Of a DNA stretch of 64,000 nt, positions 25,826 to 64,000 are shown piece after piece. How positions within the stretch are numbered: position 1 is the stretch's first letter; each line of letters starts with the position of its first letter. Under the pieces are notes generated by a model, which worked only from the letters and a program-made list of their open reading frames with translations, searched no databases and was not told where the DNA came from. The position numbers were made by a program, and so were the translations under genes. Source of the DNA: Fimbriosthenelais zetlandica (taxonomy: Eukaryota); contig OZ365114.1 of assembly GCA_977030845.1 (NCBI GenBank), forward strand, positions 26,164,001-26,228,000. Direction: 5' to 3'.

Positions 25826-25885
25826 TGTTTAAAACCTTGCGGACAACCGTTGGCGCCACTTGCACAATGTTTCCAGCTATGTCAG
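25826..25885 (+). CDS. ANOS1: Anosmin-1 exon equivalent to human exon 3 (Cys-box): CLKPCGQPLAPLAQCFQLCQ
   Basis: Acceptor ctctcatttttgcag, donor CAG|gtaagt, 60 nt, phase 0-0; Cys spacing matches human CLEPC...CQSFCE. Confidence 0.88.
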
Positions 25886-38940: not shown

Positions 38941-39157
38941 AAACAAGAGGATGATTGTGAACAGTCATGTCGTTTTCTCAAGCATGTGGAGACCGTCCGC
39001 CCAGGCACTTGTCCACCACCAGAAGACGAGAGTGGTGAAGGAAAGGAGGGTACTTGTATCGTCAACTGTGACGCTGATCCAGCCTGTGACGGGACCATGA
39101 AATGCTGTGACACTGGGTGCGGCTACACATGTCAGACACCCCTCAACATCAACATAG
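38941..39157 (+). CDS. ANOS1: Anosmin-1 exon (end of Cys-box plus WAP domain): KQEDDCEQSCRFLKHVETVRPGTCPPPEDESGEGKEGTCIVNCDADPACDGTMKCCDTGCGYTCQTPLNINI
   Basis: Long pyrimidine tract ending ttgtacag, donor G|gtcagt, 217 nt, phase 0-1; complete 8-Cys WAP pattern with KCC..GC...C. Confidence 0.97.
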
Positions 39158-47843: not shown

Positions 47844-48028
47844 GTGTTCCAGACATCCCCAGTGTCCTGGAGATTAGAGAACGCTCTAAGGGTGGGTCAG
47901 TGGAGTTGACTTGGTCCCAGGTCTATATGAACTTCTCAGCACCGCTGCTCTACATGGTGCAGCACCGCTGGAATGTGGGAAGGCACCACTCAGAGCACCA
48001 CATGACACAATGGCATCAAGTGTCTCAG
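47844..48028 (+). CDS. ANOS1: Anosmin-1 exon, FN3-1 N-terminal half: GVPDIPSVLEIRERSKGGSVELTWSQVYMNFSAPLLYMVQHRWNVGRHHSEHHMTQWHQVSQ
   Basis: Acceptor ctttgttggcag, donor CAG|gtaagc, 185 nt, phase 1-0; aligns to human GVPLKP...[26 protein letters not shown]. Confidence 0.97.
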
Positions 48029-51000
48029 GTAAGCCAGAAATTCTCTTCAATATCTTTTTTCCAAAACTTTCAACTTAGGTTAATATAATAAACTAAAGGT
48101 AGGACTCAACTGCTGCGACAGTTCTTGGACCACCATAAGGCCTTAGACACTTCAAATGAAATTTATTAAATGCTGTAATATTTCTTGAATATTATATTTC
48201 TAGACTAGAAAAGAGAATGACATTGCACTGTGTCTTTTATATTATACATTTCATCTTCATTCCAAATGGTTGTTGAGGAGTTGAAATGTTATTGATGTAA
48301 AGGACGCCTTTACATCAAAAGCACCTTTGTTAGAGCCATACACGAGTAAGATGTATCCGCCTATGACCCCTGAGAATATTTACATGATCGGTACAAGTAT
48401 TCAAGTTGTTTCCCCAAACACCACACCCTCTCCCACCCCGCTTTTCTTCCAACATGAATGAATTGCCATGCATCTTTTCATCACTTCTTCACTTAGCCAA
48501 GCTTTTATGTCTACCGCCTATGGAAATGAGTACAGGTGATGCCATGGAAATGACGGATCAATATGCAAAAGATCACCAGCCAAGTGTCATACGGCACCGA
48601 TTGGTCCATTGCTGGACCAATAAAAATAATGGCAAGAGAGCGGCTGCGGACCTGTTCCTCTATCAAATGAGGCTGGCGGTGGGGCTGCACATATTTCAGG
48701 TGGTAATGAGAAGGGACAGGTGGGGGAGCCATGATACATGCCTCTACCATGTATATTCATGAAACTCCCGGCCATGGCTACCATCTCGCTGATGAGCCCT
48801 GTGCCATTTCATTCTCCTCCCCTCGTCCCATGACTAAGAGTCTGGGCCAAGGAAACTCATTACAATCCATAGAAAGATTGCAGGGAAACAGACTTCTTGT
48901 GGCTTGGCAAATATTCCTGTCAGCCCTAATGATGTTAAAAGAAGCAACTCTCTCAGCTTTTTGGTCGGGAATAAATTTGATTGCAGCGTTTCGGTGTTTA
49001 TCATCGTGTTGGGTGTTGTCATAACAGCAACATGAATTTCTGAAAGGCATGATAAAACAATTCTGAAATAAGCTCAAAGCTATTGATAATGGTTGATTTT
49101 TCAATATACAGCTTGTCATATATTCAATCAGCAAGGGAGAGTGAGAGGGTGTTAATGGTCGGGGATGTTTGGTGGGATGGGCTGATGATTTGCTTTATGG
49201 CCGCTTTGGGGAGTATATACTGGTAGTTTGGTGGGTAGATGACAGCCCGGTTATTGTTCATCTTTAGATACCAGCTGCGGATGATGTTCTCTGGCACGTT
49301 TAATGAGTTACTTACATGAGCAGATGCTCAACAGCTCACTCCATGAAGGTCAACTCACCAAAAATGGAATGATATATGTGAGGGTATAGAGTAACTGCAG
49401 GTGCCTGACTATATGGCGGCATTATTCTGCCATTATGCCATATACCGTCTATACTCTCTGGCTGAATAAAGGGTATAGGCAGATGTTTCTACAGTAGAGT
49501 AGGAATTGCATTGGTAAAAATTGTATTCTGCATTCATTGAAAGCGAAAAGGTTCGGGAGATTACTGCATTGTATTTGTGTATTGTCCACAAAACAATATT
49601 CAAATGTTCTGTAATTTATATGGTCAAGTTTAAGCTGTGTTCTGGTCTTAGTACAAAAATGGTTTGGTTTGTATCTTAGATTTTGATTTATGATTGAATA
49701 ATGTGCTGATTGCTTCTATGAGAACAATGCTCATAATCCTCTGGAATGCCTTGTCAGATTAAGTTTAGGAATGGCAGCTGGAAATGGTAAGGAGTAATGA
49801 CCATTTGGTGAGGAGGGTCAAAGAGAGGCATATAGATGTAAAAGAATGGAACGACTGAGATTTGGTTGTCTTCTAATTTGGTAATTTGTATCTGAGGTAT
49901 TGTTTTAGCTCCTCATAAAAGGCAAGCAACAAAATAGCCAAGGCAGATGTGCTGACAGTACATGGTTCTGTAAATCAAGATGGAAACTGCCGAAAGACAT
50001 TGGACAACGCCTCCCTGATACATAATGTCCGACAGTGTTGAACCACATAACAATTCCATAGATCATATTATATTGGAACTGTAAAAAATCATACATGTAT
50101 TTGCAACCAGAGTCTGTCGCTTTCCTTCGGAAAAAGGCTCTGCAAAAATTTGGAATATTTCATTCCGCAGTTATTGTAGTGCGTTTCCAAGGCTTTCCAA
50201 GTCCTGCTCTCACTGCAGCTGTTAGATGGTTACCATATGAGCTGTCTGCTATATGTAGGAGGTGTGTACTGGTAAAGTAATGGCCATTGGGTAACCTTTC
50301 AATTTAGATCTTGATGTACCGAGATGAAGCCCAGTCTGCCCTGCCATAAAAGGGTTTCAATTTTCAGCCTGTCTGAGGGTTTTGTTGGCAAATTGATAGA
50401 TTGCCACATGAGGTGGGAGCACCATTTCCCGATAACAGGATAAGGATCCTGGCGCGGGCTCTCAGCACATGCTTGACATGCAATCTGTTTAATTCATTGA
50501 AATCTGACATGAATCACCGGGAGGACTCCTTGCAGATCATCATCCTGTGTAGCTTTCTCTGGTTGGCCAGCCATCCTGCATGTTTCTATACTTCCGAAAG
50601 AATTAATGGGAGAAATGGCTGTATTGCCCGTGCTAAAGAAATCCAAGACATAAATCTGATACAGGGTCATTTAACTGGCACAATGCAGATGGTGGAACTG
50701 TGCATCCGTGTGATAGATTCTTAGCTTGTGGCTTACCACTGAAGATGTAAACGACAGTCATGTAACAATCAGACTCATTCACCATCCATTGGGTCATTGG
50801 CACATCTTTGTGAAAGCGAGCCATAACTTGACTGGTGGACCGGGTGGTGAATGCTTTGTAGCGTCTGGCCACAATACACTGGGTGATAATACCCATGTTT
50901 GCAGCTCTTTCCTCTATTCAGCCCAGTGGCACCATTCATCCCTGACAAATGCTACTTAATCATGGTTTACTACGCCGTCTCTCACGTTTGATTCAATGAC

Positions 51001-53118
51001 ATTTGTTTGAGGATTGTGTGAGTGATTCTGTTTGGCTGCATATCGGTGCTGTGCAGGGGGCGCCTTTCAGCAAATTCTCTCCCCGGCTGGTCGACCATGT
51101 GAGCTCTGAGAACAAACACCACCAGCCCATGGGGAGTTTGCCTCTTGGTATACCCACTGACAAATCTAGGAGATTAAGAGTACAAAACCTGATTGCTAGC
51201 ACAGTATAAAACACTTAATCATGTTAAGCCTCAAGCTTGAGTCGGAGCATTAAATGGATCTATACCATAGTTGGTCGTCTAAGCTCCATATATACTAGTG
51301 TGAATGGCTGGATCACACCTAATATACACACCTCTAATCTGAGCATTCATTGAAGACCACTCACAGGGTGGTTTACACTGGAGACAGGCAGTTGTGAGCA
51401 AAGTCTAGATTTGCTGCGACCAACTCCCCTTAATCCGTCAAGGAGCTATCTGTCTGGTCATAGATTAACACTTGACTGGTGTGGTGGAGCTCGCCGGTGT
51501 CAGATAACCAATATGTTCACATGCTGACTGATGTTTCATGGCATGGCTTATTGCGGAATATTTGCTTGAGATTTGCTCCAAGTACTATTGGAGCTAGAAC
51601 CTCCCACCCCCAACCCATATCCAGACTCCATCTCACGTTCAAAGGATACTTTTTAGAAATATTTAAATATAATATTACATTTTAATTGTTAGGAATATTC
51701 ATCATTATTTTGTGCTGTACTACGACTGTGAAGTTGTTGCCAGTAGATGATGAGGATCACTGCCAAAGCAGAAGGTCAGGAAGTGCTGCACCATTTGATG
51801 GCTGTGTGAAGTCAATGTTTTACCGCAACACTTTTGATGACTTGCCACAAATGTTCTTTTTAAGCTACCTTGATCAGTTTAATGACAGAGTCTAAAAATT
51901 GAACGATCAAACAGTTTCATATTGATGCTAACTTTTTGCTGCTGAGATAAGGAAAACACTAGCACCTCTGAACTTCTGTACTTTTCCAACTTCATGAGGC
52001 ATATTCCTTACCAACAATGCTTCTTCCATCTAGACCCTGGGTATATTTCTGGTCAATAGGCAAAAAGCCCTTTTATGCACATGCTTCAACCCTCATAACT
52101 CCACCCTCAAAAGCATATATACTTCGTTCCCACTTTTTCCAAAAGACATTTAGAATAATTAATCCCATATGGGTTTTAGGTCCTTTGCTTCAGCACTTCC
52201 CCTGCACATTGAAATTGTGTTTGTCCCTCCGGAGACAACGGCGTAATTGCAGCGAACGGGGACTGCCAACCGGAAGTGGGAATATCAGCGGAAGTGGAGA
52301 CATTATCTGAGGCCTTAACAACGGTTTTCTTATAATGCACGTTGTCAGGGACGATTAGTGCCTTGGCACGGCCACCATTAGCCACATGGTCCACTAGAAA
52401 AGCAGCTCTATATACCAGGGAGACTGCAGCCCCCGACAGTCCCATCATTATCACCGCCAAAAGCTGTTGATAAGCCATTTATCCCAGAGGCTTGCTTTTT
52501 GTAGAAGCAGTGATTTGCTTATCTATTTACCAATCGAGGTGTGCTGCAAAGTCCATTAGTGGCGATTCCACTCTTTGAAAGCTTATTGCAAGTACCGAGC
52601 TACCATTACCAACTGGGATTTAAGTCTTCTGGCCTAGGATGGCACCAAATTAACTGTGTCAATTTAGTCAGAAACTTTTGAATTGAAATTGCATGTCAAG
52701 TTAACTGAATAAAAGGAGGGAATTTGGTGAATATTTCTGTCCTAGTTAAGCTGATGGGTGGTTGAATGACGTGAAAGTTATGAGCACTAGAATCTGCCAT
52801 GCAGTATAATTTGATGAATTTGTCAAAATATTATTCGACTCTTGCTTTGATGCCTATTGAACTCCTCCAATCTATTGCAAGTATCAAAATCTCTCCAACT
52901 TGAAATCTGTGTCAGATTTAATTCGGTATCTAGTGCCCAATTCATCTACACATTTTGAATTGGGAGAGGATCTTATAAATCTTCCCTCATGAACAGCACC
53001 TTTCATTTATGCCACTCATGCTGCTAGTCTCAGCATTCGATTCTTTTCCTACCTGTATTAAATTATTATGCAATAACTCGTAAATTAATTAATTATTATT
53101 TGATTGACTATATTCCAG

Positions 53119-53248
53119 ACGACGCAGACCTCTACCGTACTAAGAGATGTAGGGCCCGGTCGATGGTACGAGTTTCGAGTCAGTGCCGTGTCGGTGAACG
53201 GAAGCCAGGGTTTCTCGGAGCCCTCAAACCCATTCAAAGTCTCCAAAG
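53119..53248 (+). CDS. ANOS1: Anosmin-1 exon, FN3-1 C-terminal half: TTQTSTVLRDVGPGRWYEFRVSAVSVNGSQGFSEPSNPFKVSK
   Basis: Acceptor tatattccag, donor AAG|gtaagt, 130 nt, phase 0-1; aligns to human [43 protein letters not shown]. Confidence 0.97.
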
Positions 53249-57702: not shown

Positions 57703-57830
57703 AACCTTCAGCTCCTGGGCCACCGCAGAATCTCTCTGAGGGGGAAACGAGGGTACAAAACAACAAAGTTCATGTCACGGTCACCTGGAGACCTCCCAAG
57801 AAGTCAGACCTTCCTGTCTCAAGATACAAG
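57703..57830 (+). CDS. ANOS1: Anosmin-1 exon, FN3-2 start: EPSAPGPPQNLSEGETRVQNNKVHVTVTWRPPKKSDLPVSRYK
   Basis: Acceptor ctcattacag, donor AAG|gtaaat, 128 nt, phase 1-0; matches human DPSAPPAPANL...VTIVWDLPEEPDIPVHHYK. Confidence 0.96.
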
Positions 57831-57958
57831 GTAAATACAGGCCTAACTTCTGGGAATTGTGCAGCACCTAAGGCAAATTCCACTTTCTCTGTGCTACTAA
57901 GCGAGCATTGTTACAAAGTACATGTATTAGATTGAGACTTTGTTCTTTTTTCATGTAG

Positions 57959-58036
57959 GTTTACTGGAGCAAACGATTGAAATCGGCTTCTGCTCAACTG
58001 GTATCTTTACGGGAACACAAGAAGGCTTTACCAGGG
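57959..58036 (+). CDS. ANOS1: Anosmin-1 exon, FN3-2: VYWSKRLKSASAQLVSLREHKKALPG
   Basis: Acceptor ttcttttttcatgtag, donor GGG|gtaagt, 78 nt, phase 0-0; VYWS matches human VFWS. Confidence 0.93.
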
Positions 58037-58100
58037 GTAAGTAATAGTAGCACCTCAGTCAATGATAAGTCAATGTTGCCATCAGACCACTACTTAATGA

Positions 58101-58289
58101 ACTGCTCACATCTGCTCAGAGATGATGAGATCTATTTTTAACTGCTCATGACAGCTCTTGACACCTACAACTGTTATATTTAATGCATTTTTACTTCCCT
58201 TCATCCTGGATCATGGCCTACTGGCTGCTCGGTCATTATCTGCTCACAACTGCTCAGAAGTGATAATAGTTCGTATGAACTGCTCATGA
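58101..58289 (+). repeat. Two 51-bp copies of a triple-CTGCTCA unit (58101-58151 and 58239-58289)
   Basis: Both copies read xCTGCTCACAxCTGCTCAGA-(19 nt)-AACTGCTCATGA with identical spacing but divergent spacers. Confidence 0.75.
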
Positions 58290-58311
58290 TTACTCGCGCT
58301 TCTGACCATTG

Positions 58312-58327
58312 CCCCCCCCCCCCCCCC
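58312..58327. repeat. Poly-C run (16 nt), G4-prone on the minus strand
   Basis: Read directly from the sequence. Confidence 0.85.
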
Positions 58328-58575
58328 TTCCCATTCCAATTTACTGAGGTATGTGATATTGCCCCTCACTATATGACAACTATCATCACTTTTAAGTTTT
58401 GTTGTTACTTTCATGGAACTTTCAGAAGTCAGTCTTTGACCAAGCTAATAAAACCATCACCCAGCACCCTCCTAACAAATCCTGGTCATTTCCATCTACC
58501 TATGGGACGTGCCGGCCCAAAGTGCTGGGCCCAAGTCCCGCCGTGTCGACGGCGCTAATTGGCTGTTTTAGCTCT

Positions 58576-58589
58576 GTTGCCATGGAAAC
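58576..58589. promoter_or_regulatory. RFX X-box GTTGCCATGGAAAC (intronic)
   Basis: Identical to the 14-mer at 23794. Confidence 0.5.
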
Positions 58590-59015
58590 TAAGTGCACAA
58601 GGTGTCACCCCTTCTGAAAATCCAAAGACCAGGAAAACGTGGTTTTGTGGTCTCTACGTGATGTACATTGTTCGCGGGGTTTTCCAATGGCATTGAAGTG
58701 GGGGTTGAGTGATGTCTATGTGCATTAGGAAGGTGCTTCGATACACTACTGATGTACTCTAGGTGCAGCGTCCATGTGACAGCAACCGGCTCCCCATTTC
58801 CCACAGAGAGAATCCCCCCTGTTAAATATTTGCTGCCTGACAAATATACAAACGTCAATCACACCATGTGTCTCTTAAACCTGTGTAGTTCCCTCTCTCT
58901 CTCTTGCCCAAACGGGTGGCACCGGAAGTTGAATATTTTTGGCCCAAACCCATAGTTCCTATTTTAGAGGCATCAATTAAAGTTTATTCAACTAAAAGTC
59001 TCCATTTTCTTTCAG

Positions 59016-59072
59016 GACCAGCTTTCCTTCGAGCTCCAAAACTTGATTCCAGACACTACATACTTTGTGCAG
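59016..59072 (+). CDS. ANOS1: Anosmin-1 exon, FN3-2: DQLSFELQNLIPDTTYFVQ
   Basis: Acceptor ccattttctttcag, donor CAG|gtatgt, 57 nt, phase 0-0; FN3 L.P.T.Y.V motif. Confidence 0.93.
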
Positions 59073-60022
59073 GTATGTTTCATCTATTTTTCTCTAATAA
59101 AATGATAGAGATGTGCTATTACTGACGACGACATTAGCTGCCTTGGCTTAGTTATCTCCTCAAGTATTTCTATTGCTGAATACACCCACAGATGTAGGAT
59201 ATTAGACATAGTAAGTGGGTGAATGAACATAATTGTTAAGCGAAAAAGTTGTAGCAAATACCGAGCAGATTGTTTGGTAGGAATACTGTCTGGGCTGTAT
59301 CCTTCCTATGCTAACCCAATCTGTCCCCCACAGAACCAATAATATACAGCTATGATTTACCATAGCCTTCTACCGGAAGTAAGCATATATCTACAGTAAC
59401 TCTGCCTAGCTATATATTTATTGTTGACACAAAAAGTTTTGTTCATTGAATAGTTTAAACGCAAGAACAGCTGAGAATGTGGCAGGCCCATAGATCCATA
59501 GCCCTTTCAAAATTAAGTTTGGTGCTGAACCCAAACTTCCTGGAATACTAGAACCATTTTCAGGGATCATTGGACTCCTGTAGAGTCATATAATTCACTA
59601 AACCAACTCTAATAGAATCATGACCTATTTCCATTATAGTTTCTCACCTTGTCTGCCACTTTGTCCTCTCTTTTCAACCCTCTGCCCCTTGTTAACCTTT
59701 TAATGAAAAAGGAAATTAGTTGGGAAAGGCAGAGCTGTGAAATCTGTATGTGTTTCCTATAAGGTTGCTAATGGAAACGACCTTGAAAGGATTCGGGCGG
59801 CCTTAGAGGTGTTGCTGGCTTCGGAAGCAGGGGGGAAAGACTATGCCTAAATATCACAGGAGATTAGGTCCATGAATAACTTCCTTCTTTTGAAATGTTT
59901 CCTTCCACAGTGATCTATAACCTGTCCTCAATCAACTTTCAAAAGTATATCCCGCAACTGTGAAGGATTTGGTCAAATAAAACGTTACATTTATTGTTGT
60001 GATTTGAATTTACTTTATCCAG

Positions 60023-60119
60023 GTGATGGCAATAAGTCAGTATGGTGACATACGATTAAAGGGAGAGAGAACGAGCATGTACATTACTACCTATGCCTTA
60101 CCGCAGGCCACACAGCATG
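60023..60119 (+). CDS. ANOS1: Anosmin-1 exon, FN3-2 end: VMAISQYGDIRLKGERTSMYITTYALPQATQH
   Basis: Acceptor tactttatccag, donor G|gttagt, 97 nt, phase 0-1; matches human [23 protein letters not shown]. Confidence 0.93.
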
Positions 60120-61465
60120 GTTAGTACGCTCTTCATCGTCAATCTTTACTTCTCGGGAATGGAATTTGTCTGCTCCATTCTTTATACCTCCACAATTGTT
60201 GTGAATCTTTTTACATTGTCTTTAAATTTAACCTCTAAGGCTTTGATCCTGCTGCCTCTTGTATATTTAGATATCTGTGCTCTCTCACACCTCACACAGA
60301 GAAGTGAGAAAGATCGGAGTTCCCTCCTATTTGTGCTTAGAATGCTGTGCTAGTTTTATCATCAGAAAAAAAGTAGCGACACTTAGATACGTTCATGTTT
60401 CACTTCTTATCTAAATCACATTTGCATCTTAATATTGCGCTTCTCTAATACATCTAAAAGCATTTGGAACAGCCGAAGTGTGAGGGACAAGAGTTTTGTT
60501 TGCACAGATTAAGAATTATTTCTGTAACTTATAGTAATAAGTGACTAATATTGACTAGAATCCATGGCATTACTTCTGTACACTTCCAAGCTTGCTTTTA
60601 CCAAGCTTGTGCTTTATACCTGTGTTTATCTCGCTTCTGAAATAACAACCTCTCCGTCTCCAATATAATGCCGTGTACATTACAAGCTGTTCATGTAATT
60701 AACTTATGCTTTAATATGATTTCCCATAATTATAATGAACCAATCCTTAGCCTGTCCATTTGTTTTAAACTCTTGTCTAACAGAGGGTCTCGCCAGAAGT
60801 TCAGGAGCTCAGTCACGTGTATCAGACGAACAGACAGACACAGAGTGTGAGTAAAAGTGTGAATGTGACCAGAAATGAAGGGAATTGATGAAAAATCTGC
60901 ACAAACACTTTCCAACCTAAGATATTATCGGCGATAGATTGTACGAAAGCTCAAACGAGAGCTAGAATCATCTTGGCTTTATTGAAGAGACCTTCAGCTT
61001 TACCCATGTTGTATTACCCAATCTTCCTGGTATCATAGTCAGTTCATAGAAGTGCATGGTGTGACTAAAAACTATTATAAGTAACAAGACAGTTCTATAT
61101 CATGTGTCGTTTAGATCAGAACATTCATTCTAGATTCTTGCATTTTTGCCATTCTGTGGAATATTATTATGATCCGTAGCTTTCTCGTTCGTATTGTATA
61201 TTGTTATTCCGGAATGGAGGTTTTGCCGGAAATTGGAGATGCAAATCATCAAAAAATTTCCATTTTCCGAAATTACCTTTGAACATATAATTATGCTAAA
61301 AGACATCATACTTTCATCAATGTTGAAATTCTATTATCCGGGTATAGAACGAACATCAATGATTTGAAAATCATGACTATTTCTCTTGTTAATTTTTAAT
61401 GTATTTCCTACTGTTTGTCAGATGTTTAGAGGGTTTTCATTAATTGTTTGTCAATCATTTTACAG

Positions 61466-61591
61466 CGGGAAGGACTGACAAGCCTGTGCCAGTCCGACCT
61501 CGGCCTCCCCCTGTACAGAACCTGACTGTCAACGCCCCCTACTTCCAGAACGGACTACTAAAAGCTAACGTCACCTGGGCGCCTCCTGCTG
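61466..61591 (+). CDS. ANOS1: Anosmin-1 exon, linker and FN3-3 start: AGRTDKPVPVRPRPPPVQNLTVNAPYFQNGLLKANVTWAPPA
   Basis: Acceptor tcattttacag, donor CTG|gtaagt, 126 nt, phase 1-1; matches human LEVGAPFYQDGQLQVKVYW. Confidence 0.95.
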
Positions 61592-61901
61592 GTAAGTAAC
61601 TGCATTAAGAACTGTACCTATAGTCACAAATAAGCCCCATCACTTGTACATGAGATTTACTGATAGGATATAATAGACATGTCAGTTACATTTTTACATT
61701 TATATTTATGTAACTTTCCCTTACTTTGCCTTCCGAAAAGTACTAGAAGGTAAGTATTGGCTTGGAAATGTTCCCTTTACATAATTATCACTTTTTCTGT
61801 CATCGACCAGTGATCAAGTCAGTGATCTATTTTGCCATGTCATATATCATGATTTACTTTTAATTAAAATGATGACTAATTGTTTATGTTGATTTTTCTA
61901 G

Positions 61902-62011
61902 GTTATGAGACGTGTTTTGACAAATCCCTCATCCATTGGACGGCTGAGGTTTGCATAGCTGATCCTGACGATGAGCAGACTTTGGCTAAATCCATGTCTG
62001 CGACAACACAT
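61902..62011 (+). CDS. ANOS1: Anosmin-1 exon, FN3-3: GYETCFDKSLIHWTAEVCIADPDDEQTLAKSMSATTH
   Basis: Acceptor gatttttctag, donor CAT|gtaagc, 110 nt, phase 1-0; W..E.C and terminal TH match human RWFPEAC...GMTH. Confidence 0.92.
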
Positions 62012-62184
62012 GTAAGCCTAGTCAATGCTTTATATTATACTATTAAATTTGTATAAGCTATTTAAGGTTATGTTACTTATCGTAACTTGTTCCTACAGTG
62101 GAACCTTCCAAATAAACATCGAAAACTCAAGTTCTTCTTATTATATACTTGGTATTTTAACCCAAGAATTCTTTTCATTTGCAG

Positions 62185-62356
62185 GAGTTCTTTTTCCTCA
62201 TCTACGACTTGCAGTTTGATTGCCGCTACTTCCTCAAAGTACAGCCCGTCTGTGAGGACGGTATGATTGGTCCCATAGCTCACGTGGGCTTCAAGACGCC
62301 ATCTTGTGGCGAGGTAGAAGTCCAGGGCACTGTCCAACCAGATTGTCCCACAAACA
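62185..62356 (+). CDS. ANOS1: Anosmin-1 exon, FN3-3 end: EFFFLIYDLQFDCRYFLKVQPVCEDGMIGPIAHVGFKTPSCGEVEVQGTVQPDCPTN
   Basis: Acceptor cttttcatttgcag, donor ACA|gtacgt, 172 nt, phase 0-1; matches human DLSFSCKYKVTVQP...FTTPPC. Confidence 0.96.
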
Positions 62357-62494
62357 GTACGTTTCTACGACCAACTAACATCCAATCTTGTTTTAAAAAT
62401 TAAACCATAACTTTTTCAAACCCAGATTTTAGTCTGGTTGTCAATCGATATATATATATATGCCAATTTCTGACAGATATTTTTTTGCTTCCAG

Positions 62495-62608
62495 TGCCAA
62501 GAGTGCCTGATGCGCCTCCTAGTCTAGCGTATACTTTCCTAATAAAACAGACCAATATTACAGCCAGGGTCAACTGGCGTGAACCCCAGTCAGATGCGCC
62601 TATCACTG
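62495..62608 (+). CDS. ANOS1: Anosmin-1 exon, FN3-4 start: MPRVPDAPPSLAYTFLIKQTNITARVNWREPQSDAPIT
   Basis: Acceptor ttttttgcttccag, donor CTG|gtgagt, 114 nt, phase 1-1; matches human [22 protein letters not shown]. Confidence 0.95.
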
Positions 62609-62724
62609 GTGAGTCATCCAAACCTTATTCACTCTACTAACTTCTAGATACTATTATACTTTTGAGATTTTCCATTGAAGCATATTGCCAGTAGATTGAT
62701 TTACTTTATATTATACATTTGTAG

Positions 62725-62849
62725 GTTATCGTATAGTGTGGGGTCAGGCAGTTGAGTCACAAGATGACACGTCTCTACTCCTGCTAGACCAGAATACAGC
62801 CCTGACTAAGGTCCTCTCTACCTCTGCTGCCCTCCAAGGAGGCTCCAAG
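62725..62849 (+). CDS. ANOS1: Anosmin-1 exon, FN3-4: GYRIVWGQAVESQDDTSLLLLDQNTALTKVLSTSAALQGGSK
   Basis: Acceptor tacatttgtag, donor AAG|gtaaca, 125 nt, phase 1-0; GYRIVW matches human GFQVTW. Confidence 0.92.
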
Positions 62850-63064
62850 GTAACAATCTAGCTCATGACAACCTCTCACCATTTATGCTTACTTTAACAC
62901 TTCTAAATATGTATATATAAAAGCTCAAGGTAATTAAAGATGAATATATCATTGTCACAAAGGCATTGCAGTAAAGCGAAATCAGTAGTTGTGAAATTTT
63001 TGGTTGTCAGTCGCTAAACAACAGCAGAACATAGGTTAATCTATATCTTATGTTTTATTTTCAG

Positions 63065-63206
63065 AATTATTTCTCATTTAATGTTGGGAGCCTGCTAGAA
63101 GCCACCACATACCTAGTTAAAGTACAAGCTATATCCAAGGCAGGCTCAGGGCAGGTGTCATCCATACAATTTACCACCCCCATGCTACAAGCACCGCCTC
63201 CATTAG
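63065..63206 (+). CDS. ANOS1: Anosmin-1 exon, FN3-4 end: NYFSFNVGSLLEATTYLVKVQAISKAGSGQVSSIQFTTPMLQAPPPL
   Basis: Acceptor gttttattttcag, donor TAG|gtaaga, 142 nt, phase 0-1; FN3 T.Y.V.VQA....G.G motif. Confidence 0.96.
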
Positions 63207-63354
63207 GTAAGAAATAAGTATATAATTATATTTCTTCTCTTTTCAGCTCAACTAATAATAGCGATGAATAATTAATTTATTACTGACATTCCGCATACAG
63301 GTATAAAGCTCCGATCTCAATTGTAATATTTGGAATATTATTTCACTTGTGCAG

Positions 63355-63566
63355 GTCCCCCTTACAAACAAGACCACCAAGAAAAGAAGAGTTCGAGCAG
63401 AAACAGAGGCAGTATAGAGGAGCCGGGGGAACAACCAGCTGCCAATGTAGTCATTTTAGGCGGACGTTCATCCTCTATATCCACCCCCCAACACCGTACA
63501 TCTATCGTCGTCTACTCAGTATTCTCCCTAGTATTTACTCAATTATTAAGTTTGTCATTAACCTAG
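63355..63566 (+). CDS. ANOS1: Anosmin-1 terminal coding exon: GPPYKQDHQEKKSSSRNRGSIEEPGEQPAANVVILGGRSSSISTPQHRTSIVVYSVFSLVFTQLLSLSLT*
   Basis: Acceptor atttcacttgtgcag 148 nt after the previous donor; phase 1 continues into the supplied ORF 63330..63566 and ends at TAG. No homology to the human tail, so support is splice signal plus frame only. Confidence 0.85.
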
Positions 63567-64000
63567 GAACAGTTACACGGTTGTTTAGAGCTCATGTAAC
63601 ATACATTTTAATCAAAAAAAGATTCTTTTGTTTATTTTCTTTGTATATGATAAAAAGAGAGTTCAATAATGGTGTTTAGACACTGCTGATGTGGAAAAAG
63701 GGAAGGATAAATGGTGAATACATGTGGGAGAGTAGGTATGTTTGTGTAAAAAATATATATAAGAATTGTACGATTGATTCATGCACCAATGACATTGTGT
63801 CTAACAATGATAAAGACACAATATATGTCCTGATGTACTACGATAAAACCACATTGCATATTACATGCAAAGATGATATATTTAACCAATAACAGCATCA
63901 AGGAGATGCCAACGATTAGCTAGATATATAATTATACCTGAGTATTACAAGTTGTAGAAATACATGAAGGAGTACTGCATCTAATCGGGTATTAAGTACA

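What the first reader, a model, noticed from the sequence alone, without database searches (positions are those of the whole stretch)
63355..63566. Four-FN3 anosmin-1 that appears to end in a GPI-anchor signal: a membrane-tethered Kallmann protein
Seen: the last exon encodes a polar linker, a small-residue patch (GGRSSS, 63459-63476), a 9-aa polar spacer (ISTPQHRTS) and a 20-aa hydrophobic stretch (IVVYSVFSLVFTQLLSLSLT) that runs to the stop with no cytosolic tail. Established: this is the standard GPI-attachment signal layout. Vertebrate anosmin-1 is secreted and ends in a basic His-rich tail, and from memory C. elegans KAL-1 (three FN3) was predicted to carry a GPI signal. Inference: this ortholog combines the vertebrate four-FN3 architecture and intron structure with surface tethering (omega site probably Ser at 63468). 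That would suggest anchoring is ancestral and vertebrates swapped the last exon to make a diffusible HS/FGFR1 ligand.
Basis: partly seen in the sequence, partly recalled or inferred. Interest (0 to 1): 0.75.

Follow-up and report, generated by a model that had tools for sequence, protein, structure and literature searches.

The report
Annelid anosmin-1 with GPI-type tail
The last exon of this worm's anosmin-1 (Kallmann syndrome protein) gene really does encode a membrane-anchor (GPI-type) signal, but similar tails occur in most non-vertebrate anosmins sampled here and have been predicted before in a nematode and a flatworm, so this is an ordinary member of a known pattern.

Summary
Exon 63355-63566 joins 63206 in phase 1 through a GT-AG intron. 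It encodes a polar linker, GGRSSS, the spacer ISTPQHRTS and an uncharged 20-residue hydrophobic end that runs into TAG.

The gene is a WAP plus four-FN3 anosmin-1. It belongs to a spiralian, probably an annelid, not a deuterostome.

A related species keeps the same exon: same acceptor and phase, same 70 codons, same stop position, the SSS patch, TPQHRTS and a hydrophobic end. By chance such a tail is rare: only 1 of 763 six-frame ORFs in the window, this exon, has the full layout.

Hydrophobic C-ends preceded by small residues also occur in annelid, nemertean, priapulid and amphioxus orthologs. Two of these come from mRNA contigs with a stop and a 3'UTR after the tail. Teleost, mammal and moth sequences lack the tail.

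Predicted GPI sites are already published for C. elegans KAL-1 and planarian Anos1a. This is therefore a new member of a known kind.

Three things are missing: no GPI predictor could be run, no RNA run was listed for this species, and exon 1 (signal peptide) was not found.

The parts
63355..63566 (+). Terminal coding exon (E16) of the anosmin-1 gene. It encodes a linker, the omega region, a spacer, the hydrophobic tail and the TAG stop.
   Evidence: It is conserved as a 70-codon exon with the same acceptor, phase and stop position in a related species (L001:10088-10300 and L002).
63459..63476 (+). GGRSSS small-residue patch, the candidate omega region. The omega residue is probably one of the Ser codons at 63468-63476.
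   Evidence: The relative has NGPSSSAS at the aligned position. A rule-based scan picks the third Ser (S-I-S) with a 7-residue spacer, but the first Ser also fits.
63477..63503 (+). Polar spacer ISTPQHRTS.
   Evidence: TPQHRTS is identical in the relative.
63504..63563 (+). Uncharged 20-residue hydrophobic C-terminal segment IVVYSVFSLVFTQLLSLSLT.
   Evidence: Mean KD is 1.83. The relative has TVTYSVLYLGIVLIARGLVT (KD 1.6) ending at the same codon.
63207..63354 (+). Last intron (148 nt, GT-AG, phase 1), lying just after FN3-4.
   Evidence: The relative has the same junction with a longer intron. Amphioxus has a phase-1 intron 5 alignment columns away.
63065..63206 (+). Exon E15, the second half of FN3-4.
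   Evidence: fn3 hit. It is 82% identical to the relative and matches orthologs by tblastn.
62495..62849 (+). Exons E13 (62495-62608) and E14 (62725-62849), the first half of FN3-4.
61466..62356 (+). Exons E10 (61466-61591), E11 (61902-62011) and E12 (62185-62356), the divergent FN3-3 (Ig_ANOS1-type).
   Evidence: The matching ORF in the relative carries PF28407 Ig_ANOS1.
57703..60119 (+). Exons E6 (57703-57830), E7 (57959-58036), E8 (59016-59072) and E9 (60023-60119), forming FN3-2.
47844..53248 (+). Exons E4 (47844-48028) and E5 (53119-53248), forming FN3-1.
38941..39157 (+). Exon E3, the end of the Cys-rich region plus the WAP domain.
   Evidence: PF00095 WAP with E = 9.8e-9.
25826..25885 (+). 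Exon E2, part of the Cys-rich box (CLKPCGQPLAPLAQCFQLCQ). One further upstream exon (E1b) lies outside the window at L005:5093-5173. Exon 1 was not located.
   Evidence: Exon 1 was searched for without result.
63567..63630 (+). Start of the 3'UTR, with a short motif (TTTTAATCAAAAA at 63606) shared with the relative about 40 nt after the stop.

Best explanation
The window holds most of the anosmin-1 (ANOS1/KAL1) gene of a spiralian, probably an annelid. Its layout is Cys-box, WAP, four FN3 repeats, then a separate last exon. That exon encodes a flexible linker and a C-terminal GPI-attachment signal. Inferred mechanism: the protein enters the ER. The GPI transamidase cuts at a Ser of the SSS triplet (63468-63476), removes the 28-31 residue spacer plus hydrophobic tail, and attaches a GPI lipid. 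The WAP/FN3 ectodomain is then held on the outer face of the cell that makes it, where it meets heparan sulfate and receptors. In vertebrates, by contrast, the protein diffuses. Shown here: the exon, its junction, the signal layout, its conservation, and its spread among non-vertebrate orthologs. Inferred: cleavage, lipid attachment and the exact omega residue.
For: 1) The sequence and frame are confirmed. 2) A related species keeps the exon with the same acceptor and phase, 70 codons, TAG at the same codon, SSS, an identical TPQHRTS, and a hydrophobic end whose sequence differs. In the 10 kb downstream, this exon is the only DNA conserved between the two species. 3) The chance rate of such a tail is about 1-2 in 763 ORFs. 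4) A maximum 15-residue KD of at least about 1.7 lying within 10 residues of the C-end, preceded by a small-residue or Ser-rich patch, is seen in Owenia, Lineus, Tubulanus, Priapulus, Branchiostoma and most of the unnamed transcript-derived annelid-clade orthologs. Teleost anos1b, a mammal and Galleria lack it. 5) Two orthologs sit on intronless 2.9-3.1 kb RNA-assembly contigs, with the stop right after the tail and 0.6-0.7 kb of 3'UTR. 6) The tail is only moderately hydrophobic (7 of 20 residues are S/T/Q/Y) and has no cytosolic residues. By established knowledge of GPI signals this is the GPI pattern rather than a stop-transfer anchor. 7) The genome has a Gaa1 transamidase-subunit gene. 8) There is published precedent: predicted GPI sites in C. 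elegans KAL-1 (PMC3580776) and planarian Anos1a (PMC12932670).
Against: No dedicated GPI predictor was available; my scan is a crude rule set. No RNA run was listed for this species, so use of this exon rests on comparison with relatives. Exon 1 with the signal peptide was not found within 90 kb upstream; ER entry is inferred from the hydrophobic N-termini visible in the orthologs. With the first Ser as omega, the spacer plus tail is 31 residues, at the long end for GPI signals. The stretch before the omega region contains a mildly hydrophobic NVVIL. Some orthologs have 10-18 residues, some of them basic, after the hydrophobic segment (Tubulanus, P0070). The Capitella tail is weakly hydrophobic. 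No anosmin has been shown experimentally to be GPI-anchored in the papers read.
Confidence: 0.65

Rival explanations
1. The hydrophobic end is an uncleaved C-terminal transmembrane anchor. The protein would then be a type I membrane protein with no cytosolic tail, tethered but not lipid-linked.
For: A 20-residue uncharged hydrophobic segment is long enough to span a bilayer. Some orthologs carry 10-18 extra residues with basic ends after the segment (Tubulanus ...SLSWRR, P0070 ...GYHNKR), which looks more like a transmembrane segment plus a short tail.
Against: There are no residues, and no positive charges, after the segment in the window or its relative. The segment is rich in S/T/Q/Y. A conserved small-residue patch sits 7-11 residues upstream, as in GPI signals. 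By established knowledge, proteins with this layout are normally processed by the transamidase.
Confidence: 0.12
2. The exon is used, but the tail does not anchor the protein. It might be clipped by another protease, or act in ER quality control or folding, so that the mature protein is soluble and matrix-bound as in vertebrates.
For: Vertebrate and Drosophila anosmins work without an anchor and bind surfaces through heparan sulfate (PMC3580776). The tail sequence itself is poorly conserved: about 5 of 20 residues are identical to the relative.
Against: The hydrophobic character, length and stop position are conserved while the sequence drifts. That is how signal-type segments evolve. The feature is kept across at least four phyla.
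Confidence: 0.1
3. This is a gene-model artefact. The main transcript ends elsewhere, in an alternative terminal exon or by intron retention, and the ORF at 63355-63566 is minor or unused.
For: No RNA data exist for this species. Only 434 bases of the window lie after the stop. There is no AATAAA within 1.6 kb downstream, only ATTAAA at about window+65167. If the last intron were retained, the frame would stop after two codons (GKK*), giving a tail-less form.
Against: The splice sites are canonical and in phase. The exon and a 3'UTR motif are conserved in the relative, and nothing else downstream is. The PPY start of the exon aligns with annelid transcripts that end in hydrophobic tails. The stop after intron retention is not conserved in the relative.
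Confidence: 0.08

Closest known systems
C. elegans KAL-1 (CeKAL-1), a nematode anosmin-1 with a predicted GPI-anchoring site
   Same: It has a signal peptide, Cys-rich region, WAP, FnIII repeats and a predicted C-terminal GPI site, and it lacks the His-rich tail (PMC3580776).
   Different: CeKAL-1 is described with three FnIII repeats, whereas this gene has four. CeKAL-1 was not retrieved in my searches, so the two tails were not aligned. Anchoring is a prediction in both.
Planarian (Schmidtea mediterranea) Anos1a, a putative GPI-anchored anosmin that partners RoboA
   Same: It is a spiralian anosmin with WAP and FN domains and a putative GPI anchor site (PMC12932670, figure 3d legend).
   Different: The planarian has four paralogs (anos1a-d). 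Only one gene was examined here. The planarian sequence was not compared directly.
Annelid, nemertean, priapulid and amphioxus anosmin-1 models in public databases (Capitella teleta, Owenia fusiformis, Paralvinella palmiformis, Lineus longissimus, Tubulanus polymorphus, Priapulus caudatus, Branchiostoma floridae)
   Same: They are 36-48% identical over about 600 residues and have the same domain order. Most end in a small-residue patch followed by a hydrophobic end. Amphioxus shares many intron positions, including a phase-1 intron before its tail exon.
   Different: The tail sequences cannot be aligned between phyla. The Capitella tail is weakly hydrophobic. The Paralvinella model runs 30 residues past the hydrophobic segment.
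Vertebrate anosmin-1 (ANOS1/KAL1 and teleost anos1b)
   Same: It has Cys-box, WAP and four FN3 repeats. Six intron positions and phases are identical in the window gene, amphioxus and a teleost, and more are shared pairwise.
   Different: Vertebrate proteins are secreted and end in a basic His-rich region (PMC3580776) or stop right after FN3-4 (teleost 1b). They have no hydrophobic end. Teleost 1b has no separate tail exon.

Membership tests
Anosmin-1 (ANOS1/KAL1) | WAP four-disulfide core domain following an N-terminal Cys-rich box | tested here: met
   PF00095 WAP hits exon 38941-39157 with E = 9.8e-9. Cys-box exons E1b and E2 show the ortholog spacing C-x5-C-x2-C-x3-C. PF17869 Cys_box hits the closest ortholog.
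Anosmin-1 (ANOS1/KAL1) | Four FN3-type repeats after WAP, the third being the divergent Ig_ANOS1 type | tested here: met
   fn3 hits fall on the exons of FN3-1, FN3-2 and FN3-4. The model aligns end to end with orthologs carrying 3-4 fn3 stretches plus PF28407. The relative's FN3-3 ORF is flagged Ig_ANOS1.
Anosmin-1 (ANOS1/KAL1) | Orthology: best hits and tree position among proteins named anosmin-1 | tested here: met
   The FN3-1 exon finds anosmin-1 proteins first. In the tree the window model lies inside a clade with 97/97 support together with the annelid sequences, and the chordates are separate.
Anosmin-1 (ANOS1/KAL1) | N-terminal signal peptide | tested here: inconclusive
   Exon 1 was not located in the window or in 90 kb upstream. 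Orthologs start with hydrophobic N-termini.
GPI-anchored proteins (C-terminal GPI-attachment signal) | Small residues at omega and omega+2 | tested here: met
   The SSS triplet at 63468-63476 offers S-S-S or S-I-S. The relative has SSSAS.
GPI-anchored proteins (C-terminal GPI-attachment signal) | Polar spacer of about 5-10 residues, then a hydrophobic segment that runs to the C-terminus with no cytosolic tail | tested here: met
   The spacer is 7-9 residues ((IS)TPQHRTS). It is followed by 20 uncharged residues with mean KD 1.83 and then TAG. The relative has the same layout.
GPI-anchored proteins (C-terminal GPI-attachment signal) | Positive call by a trained predictor (NetGPI, PredGPI, big-PI) | not testable with these tools
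   No such predictor is installed. Only my own rule scan was run.
GPI-anchored proteins (C-terminal GPI-attachment signal) | Transamidase machinery present in the genome | tested here: met
   PF04114 Gaa1 exons lie on G000 C19, with a best E of 2.1e-25, over the family cut-off.
GPI-anchored proteins (C-terminal GPI-attachment signal) | Release by PI-PLC, or a lipid-modified C-terminus | not testable with these tools
   This is an experiment.

The most novel reading that the evidence does not exclude
A C-terminal GPI-type anchor, encoded by its own last exon behind a phase-1 intron, is the ancestral bilaterian state of anosmin-1. It is kept in annelids, nemerteans, flatworms, priapulids, nematodes and amphioxus. 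It was lost independently in insects and at the base of vertebrates, where the protein became a diffusible heparan-sulfate-bound ligand. The original role of the Kallmann protein would then be contact-dependent, cell-surface signalling.
Probability: 0.5. Interest if true: 0.45.

Novelty: new member of a known kind. Interest (0 to 1): 0.3.

Why it matters
How anosmin-1 acts, as a diffusible matrix cue or as a cell-bound co-receptor for FGFR, heparan sulfate or Robo, is still debated. If most invertebrate anosmins, amphioxus included, are tethered, then results from C. elegans and planarians concern a membrane-bound form. The vertebrate secreted form would be the derived one. That should shape how invertebrate models of Kallmann syndrome are read. 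For this gene alone the result is an annotation: an annelid-type anosmin-1 with a probable GPI signal.

Tried and rejected
1) RNA evidence. Both run searches (on 61400-64000, on 62100-64000) listed no run, so read laying was never used.

2) Exon 1. I tried regex searches for the RCxxRCL motif, relaxed tblastn with ortholog N-termini, and a small HMM, over the first 26 kb of the window plus 90 kb upstream. Only E1b was found (L005:5093-5173). A weak hit, IMKARCRV at about -15 kb, was rejected because it has no upstream Met or signal peptide and no usable donor.

3) Alternative terminal exon. blastn of 10.8 kb downstream against the relative found nothing conserved except this exon. The idea of a tail-less isoform by intron retention (GKK*) was dropped because the stop is not conserved in the relative.

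4) The Pfam scan of the last-exon ORF gave no family, as expected for a linker plus signal.

6) Literature searches for anosmin with annelid or amphioxus found no paper on the tail's evolution.

7) Structure and complex prediction were not used, because they would not bear on the claim.

Full report
**Observation**

The exon begins at 63355 behind ...tgcag, and the preceding exon ends at 63206 before gtaaga. The junction is phase 1 (g + gt = Gly).

The frame reads PPYKQDHQEKKSSSRNRGSIEEPGEQPAANVVIL, GGRSSS (63459-63476), ISTPQHRTS (63477-63503) and IVVYSVFSLVFTQLLSLSLT (63504-63563), followed by TAG. The last 20 residues are uncharged, with a mean Kyte-Doolittle value of 1.83.

As a chance control I took all 763 six-frame ORFs of at least 40 aa in the window. 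Two end in an uncharged 20-mer that hydrophobic. Only one, this exon, also has a polar spacer and a small omega/omega+2 motif.

**The gene**

ORF inspection, Pfam and tblastn with orthologs define 15 exons in the window:
- E2, Cys-box: 25826-25885.
- E3, WAP: 38941-39157.
- E4-E5, FN3-1.
- E6-E9, FN3-2.
- E10-E12, FN3-3, the divergent Ig_ANOS1 type.
- E13-E15, FN3-4.
- E16, the tail.

Joined, they give one open 650-aa frame with GT-AG at every intron.

One more exon (E1b, HLGG...CFEDPACTA) lies 4.9 kb upstream of the window, at L005:5093-5173. Its cysteine spacing matches the orthologs. Exon 1, which should carry the signal peptide and the RCxxRCL motif, was not found in 90 kb upstream.

**Whose gene**

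The FN3-1 exon and then a full-length hit retrieve proteins named anosmin-1 from Capitella, Paralvinella, Owenia, Tubulanus, Lineus, Priapulus, Branchiostoma, teleosts and a mammal, plus unnamed transcript-derived proteins. Identity to the model peaks at 48%.

In a maximum-likelihood tree the model lies inside a clade with 97/97 support together with the annelid sequences. Chordates are separate. Other notes of this scan also call the genome annelid-like. The animal is therefore a spiralian, probably an annelid, and not an invertebrate deuterostome.

**Conservation of the tail exon**

Searching with the last-exon ORF found two ORFs on two large contigs of one ENA assembly. They have the same acceptor (...gcag|GG CCT CCT TAT), the same phase and the same 70 codons. 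TAG falls at the same codon. PPYKQDHQEK, EQPAANVV, SSS and TPQHRTS are conserved, and the protein ends in TVTYSVLYLGIVLIARGLVT.

The FN3-4 exons are 71-82% identical between the two species. The tail exon is 65% identical, and the last 20 residues about 25%, yet they stay hydrophobic. This is the pattern expected of a signal-type segment.

Within 10 kb downstream, this exon is the only DNA conserved between the two species. A short 3'UTR motif follows about 40 nt after the stop in both.

**Other orthologs**

A hydrophobic segment at or within 10 residues of the C-end, preceded by a small-residue or Ser-rich patch, is present in Owenia, Lineus, Tubulanus, Priapulus, Branchiostoma and in nearly all transcript-derived annelid-clade proteins. 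It is weak in Capitella. It is absent in three teleost anos1b proteins, one fish-like transcript, a mammal fragment and Galleria.

Two of the tail-bearing proteins lie on intronless contigs of 2.9 and 3.1 kb from RNA assemblies. In both, the stop comes directly after the tail and 0.6-0.7 kb of 3'UTR follows. In relatives, therefore, this kind of end is the transcribed one.

**Introns**

I mapped the exact exon structures of the amphioxus and a teleost anos1b gene onto the protein alignment.
- Six intron positions and phases are identical in all three genes.
- Four more are shared between the window gene and one of the other two.
- Three further introns have the same phase within 4-14 alignment columns.

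The window's last intron (phase 1, 12 residues after FTTP) has an amphioxus counterpart (phase 1, 11 residues after FTVP, 5 alignment columns away) in front of a 93-residue linker-plus-hydrophobic-tail exon. Teleost 1b has no such intron or exon.

**Mechanism**

The layout is a small-residue patch, a 7-9 residue polar spacer, and a moderately hydrophobic end with no cytosolic residues. By established knowledge this is the GPI-attachment signal.

I infer the following steps:
- The protein enters the ER.
- The transamidase cleaves at a Ser of the SSS triplet. The third Ser gives omega+2 = Ser and a tail start at omega+10. The first Ser also fits.
- A GPI lipid is attached, and the WAP/FN3 ectodomain is displayed on the producing cell.

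The genome encodes a Gaa1 transamidase subunit. None of the processing steps is shown here. No trained predictor was available and no RNA run was listed for the species.

**Comparison with what is known**

A predicted GPI site is published for C. elegans KAL-1, described with three FnIII repeats (PMC3580776). Putative GPI sites are stated for planarian Anos1a and C. elegans Anos1 (PMC12932670). Vertebrate anosmin-1 is secreted and ends in a His-rich region (PMC3580776).

I found no paper on annelid anosmin or on the evolution of the tail. The finding is therefore a new member of a known kind.

The wider pattern seen here is a modest but testable evolutionary point: tails in four phyla sampled plus two from the literature, and none in vertebrates or insects. 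It still lacks a cnidarian or ambulacrarian outgroup.

**Verdict**

My confidence that the protein is GPI-anchored is 0.65, and about 0.77 that it is membrane-tethered in some way. Interest is 0.3.

Noticed in passing
window 62609-62724 versus L001:7946-8197 and L002:7968-8198: The 116-nt phase-1 intron between E13 and E14 (APIT|GYRIVWGQ) is absent in the related species, where the two exons form one open frame. Amphioxus has an intron at this position and phase, so the relative appears to have lost it.
   Followed up: partly
window 61902-62260 (E11 and E12): The two cysteines in GYETC and KVQPVCEDG are shared with the related species (GYERC, KVQPVCDDG) but absent from the Capitella, Paralvinella and P0066 orthologs examined. 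The other four FN3-3 cysteines are invariant in all 10 aligned orthologs. This bears on the neighbouring finding s1-193493.
   Followed up: partly
window 63606-63618; L001:10337; L002:10340: A short 3'UTR motif, TTTTAATCAAAAA (within ATAC(A/G)TTTTAATCAAAAA), lies about 40 nt after the stop in both species, while the rest of the downstream DNA has diverged. Its function is unknown.
   Followed up: no
window 63207-63217: If the last intron were retained, the frame would end after two codons (…PPPLGKK*), giving a tail-less, presumably secreted form. This stop is not conserved in the relative, so it may be chance.
   Followed up: partly
protein P0003: The representative search with the 61-residue FN3-1 exon gave as its top hit a 2069-aa protein with 35 matching stretches, and two others with several stretches each (P0031 with 8, P0035 with 6). 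These look like proteins built from many anosmin-FN3-1-like repeats. They were not examined.
   Followed up: no
L005:5093-5173 (G000:C21:26159093-26159173), 4.9 kb upstream of the window: An additional Cys-box exon of this gene lies outside the window. The intron to E2 is about 30.7 kb. The first exon is still unlocated more than 90 kb upstream or is too diverged to detect, so the gene spans well over 68 kb.
   Followed up: partly
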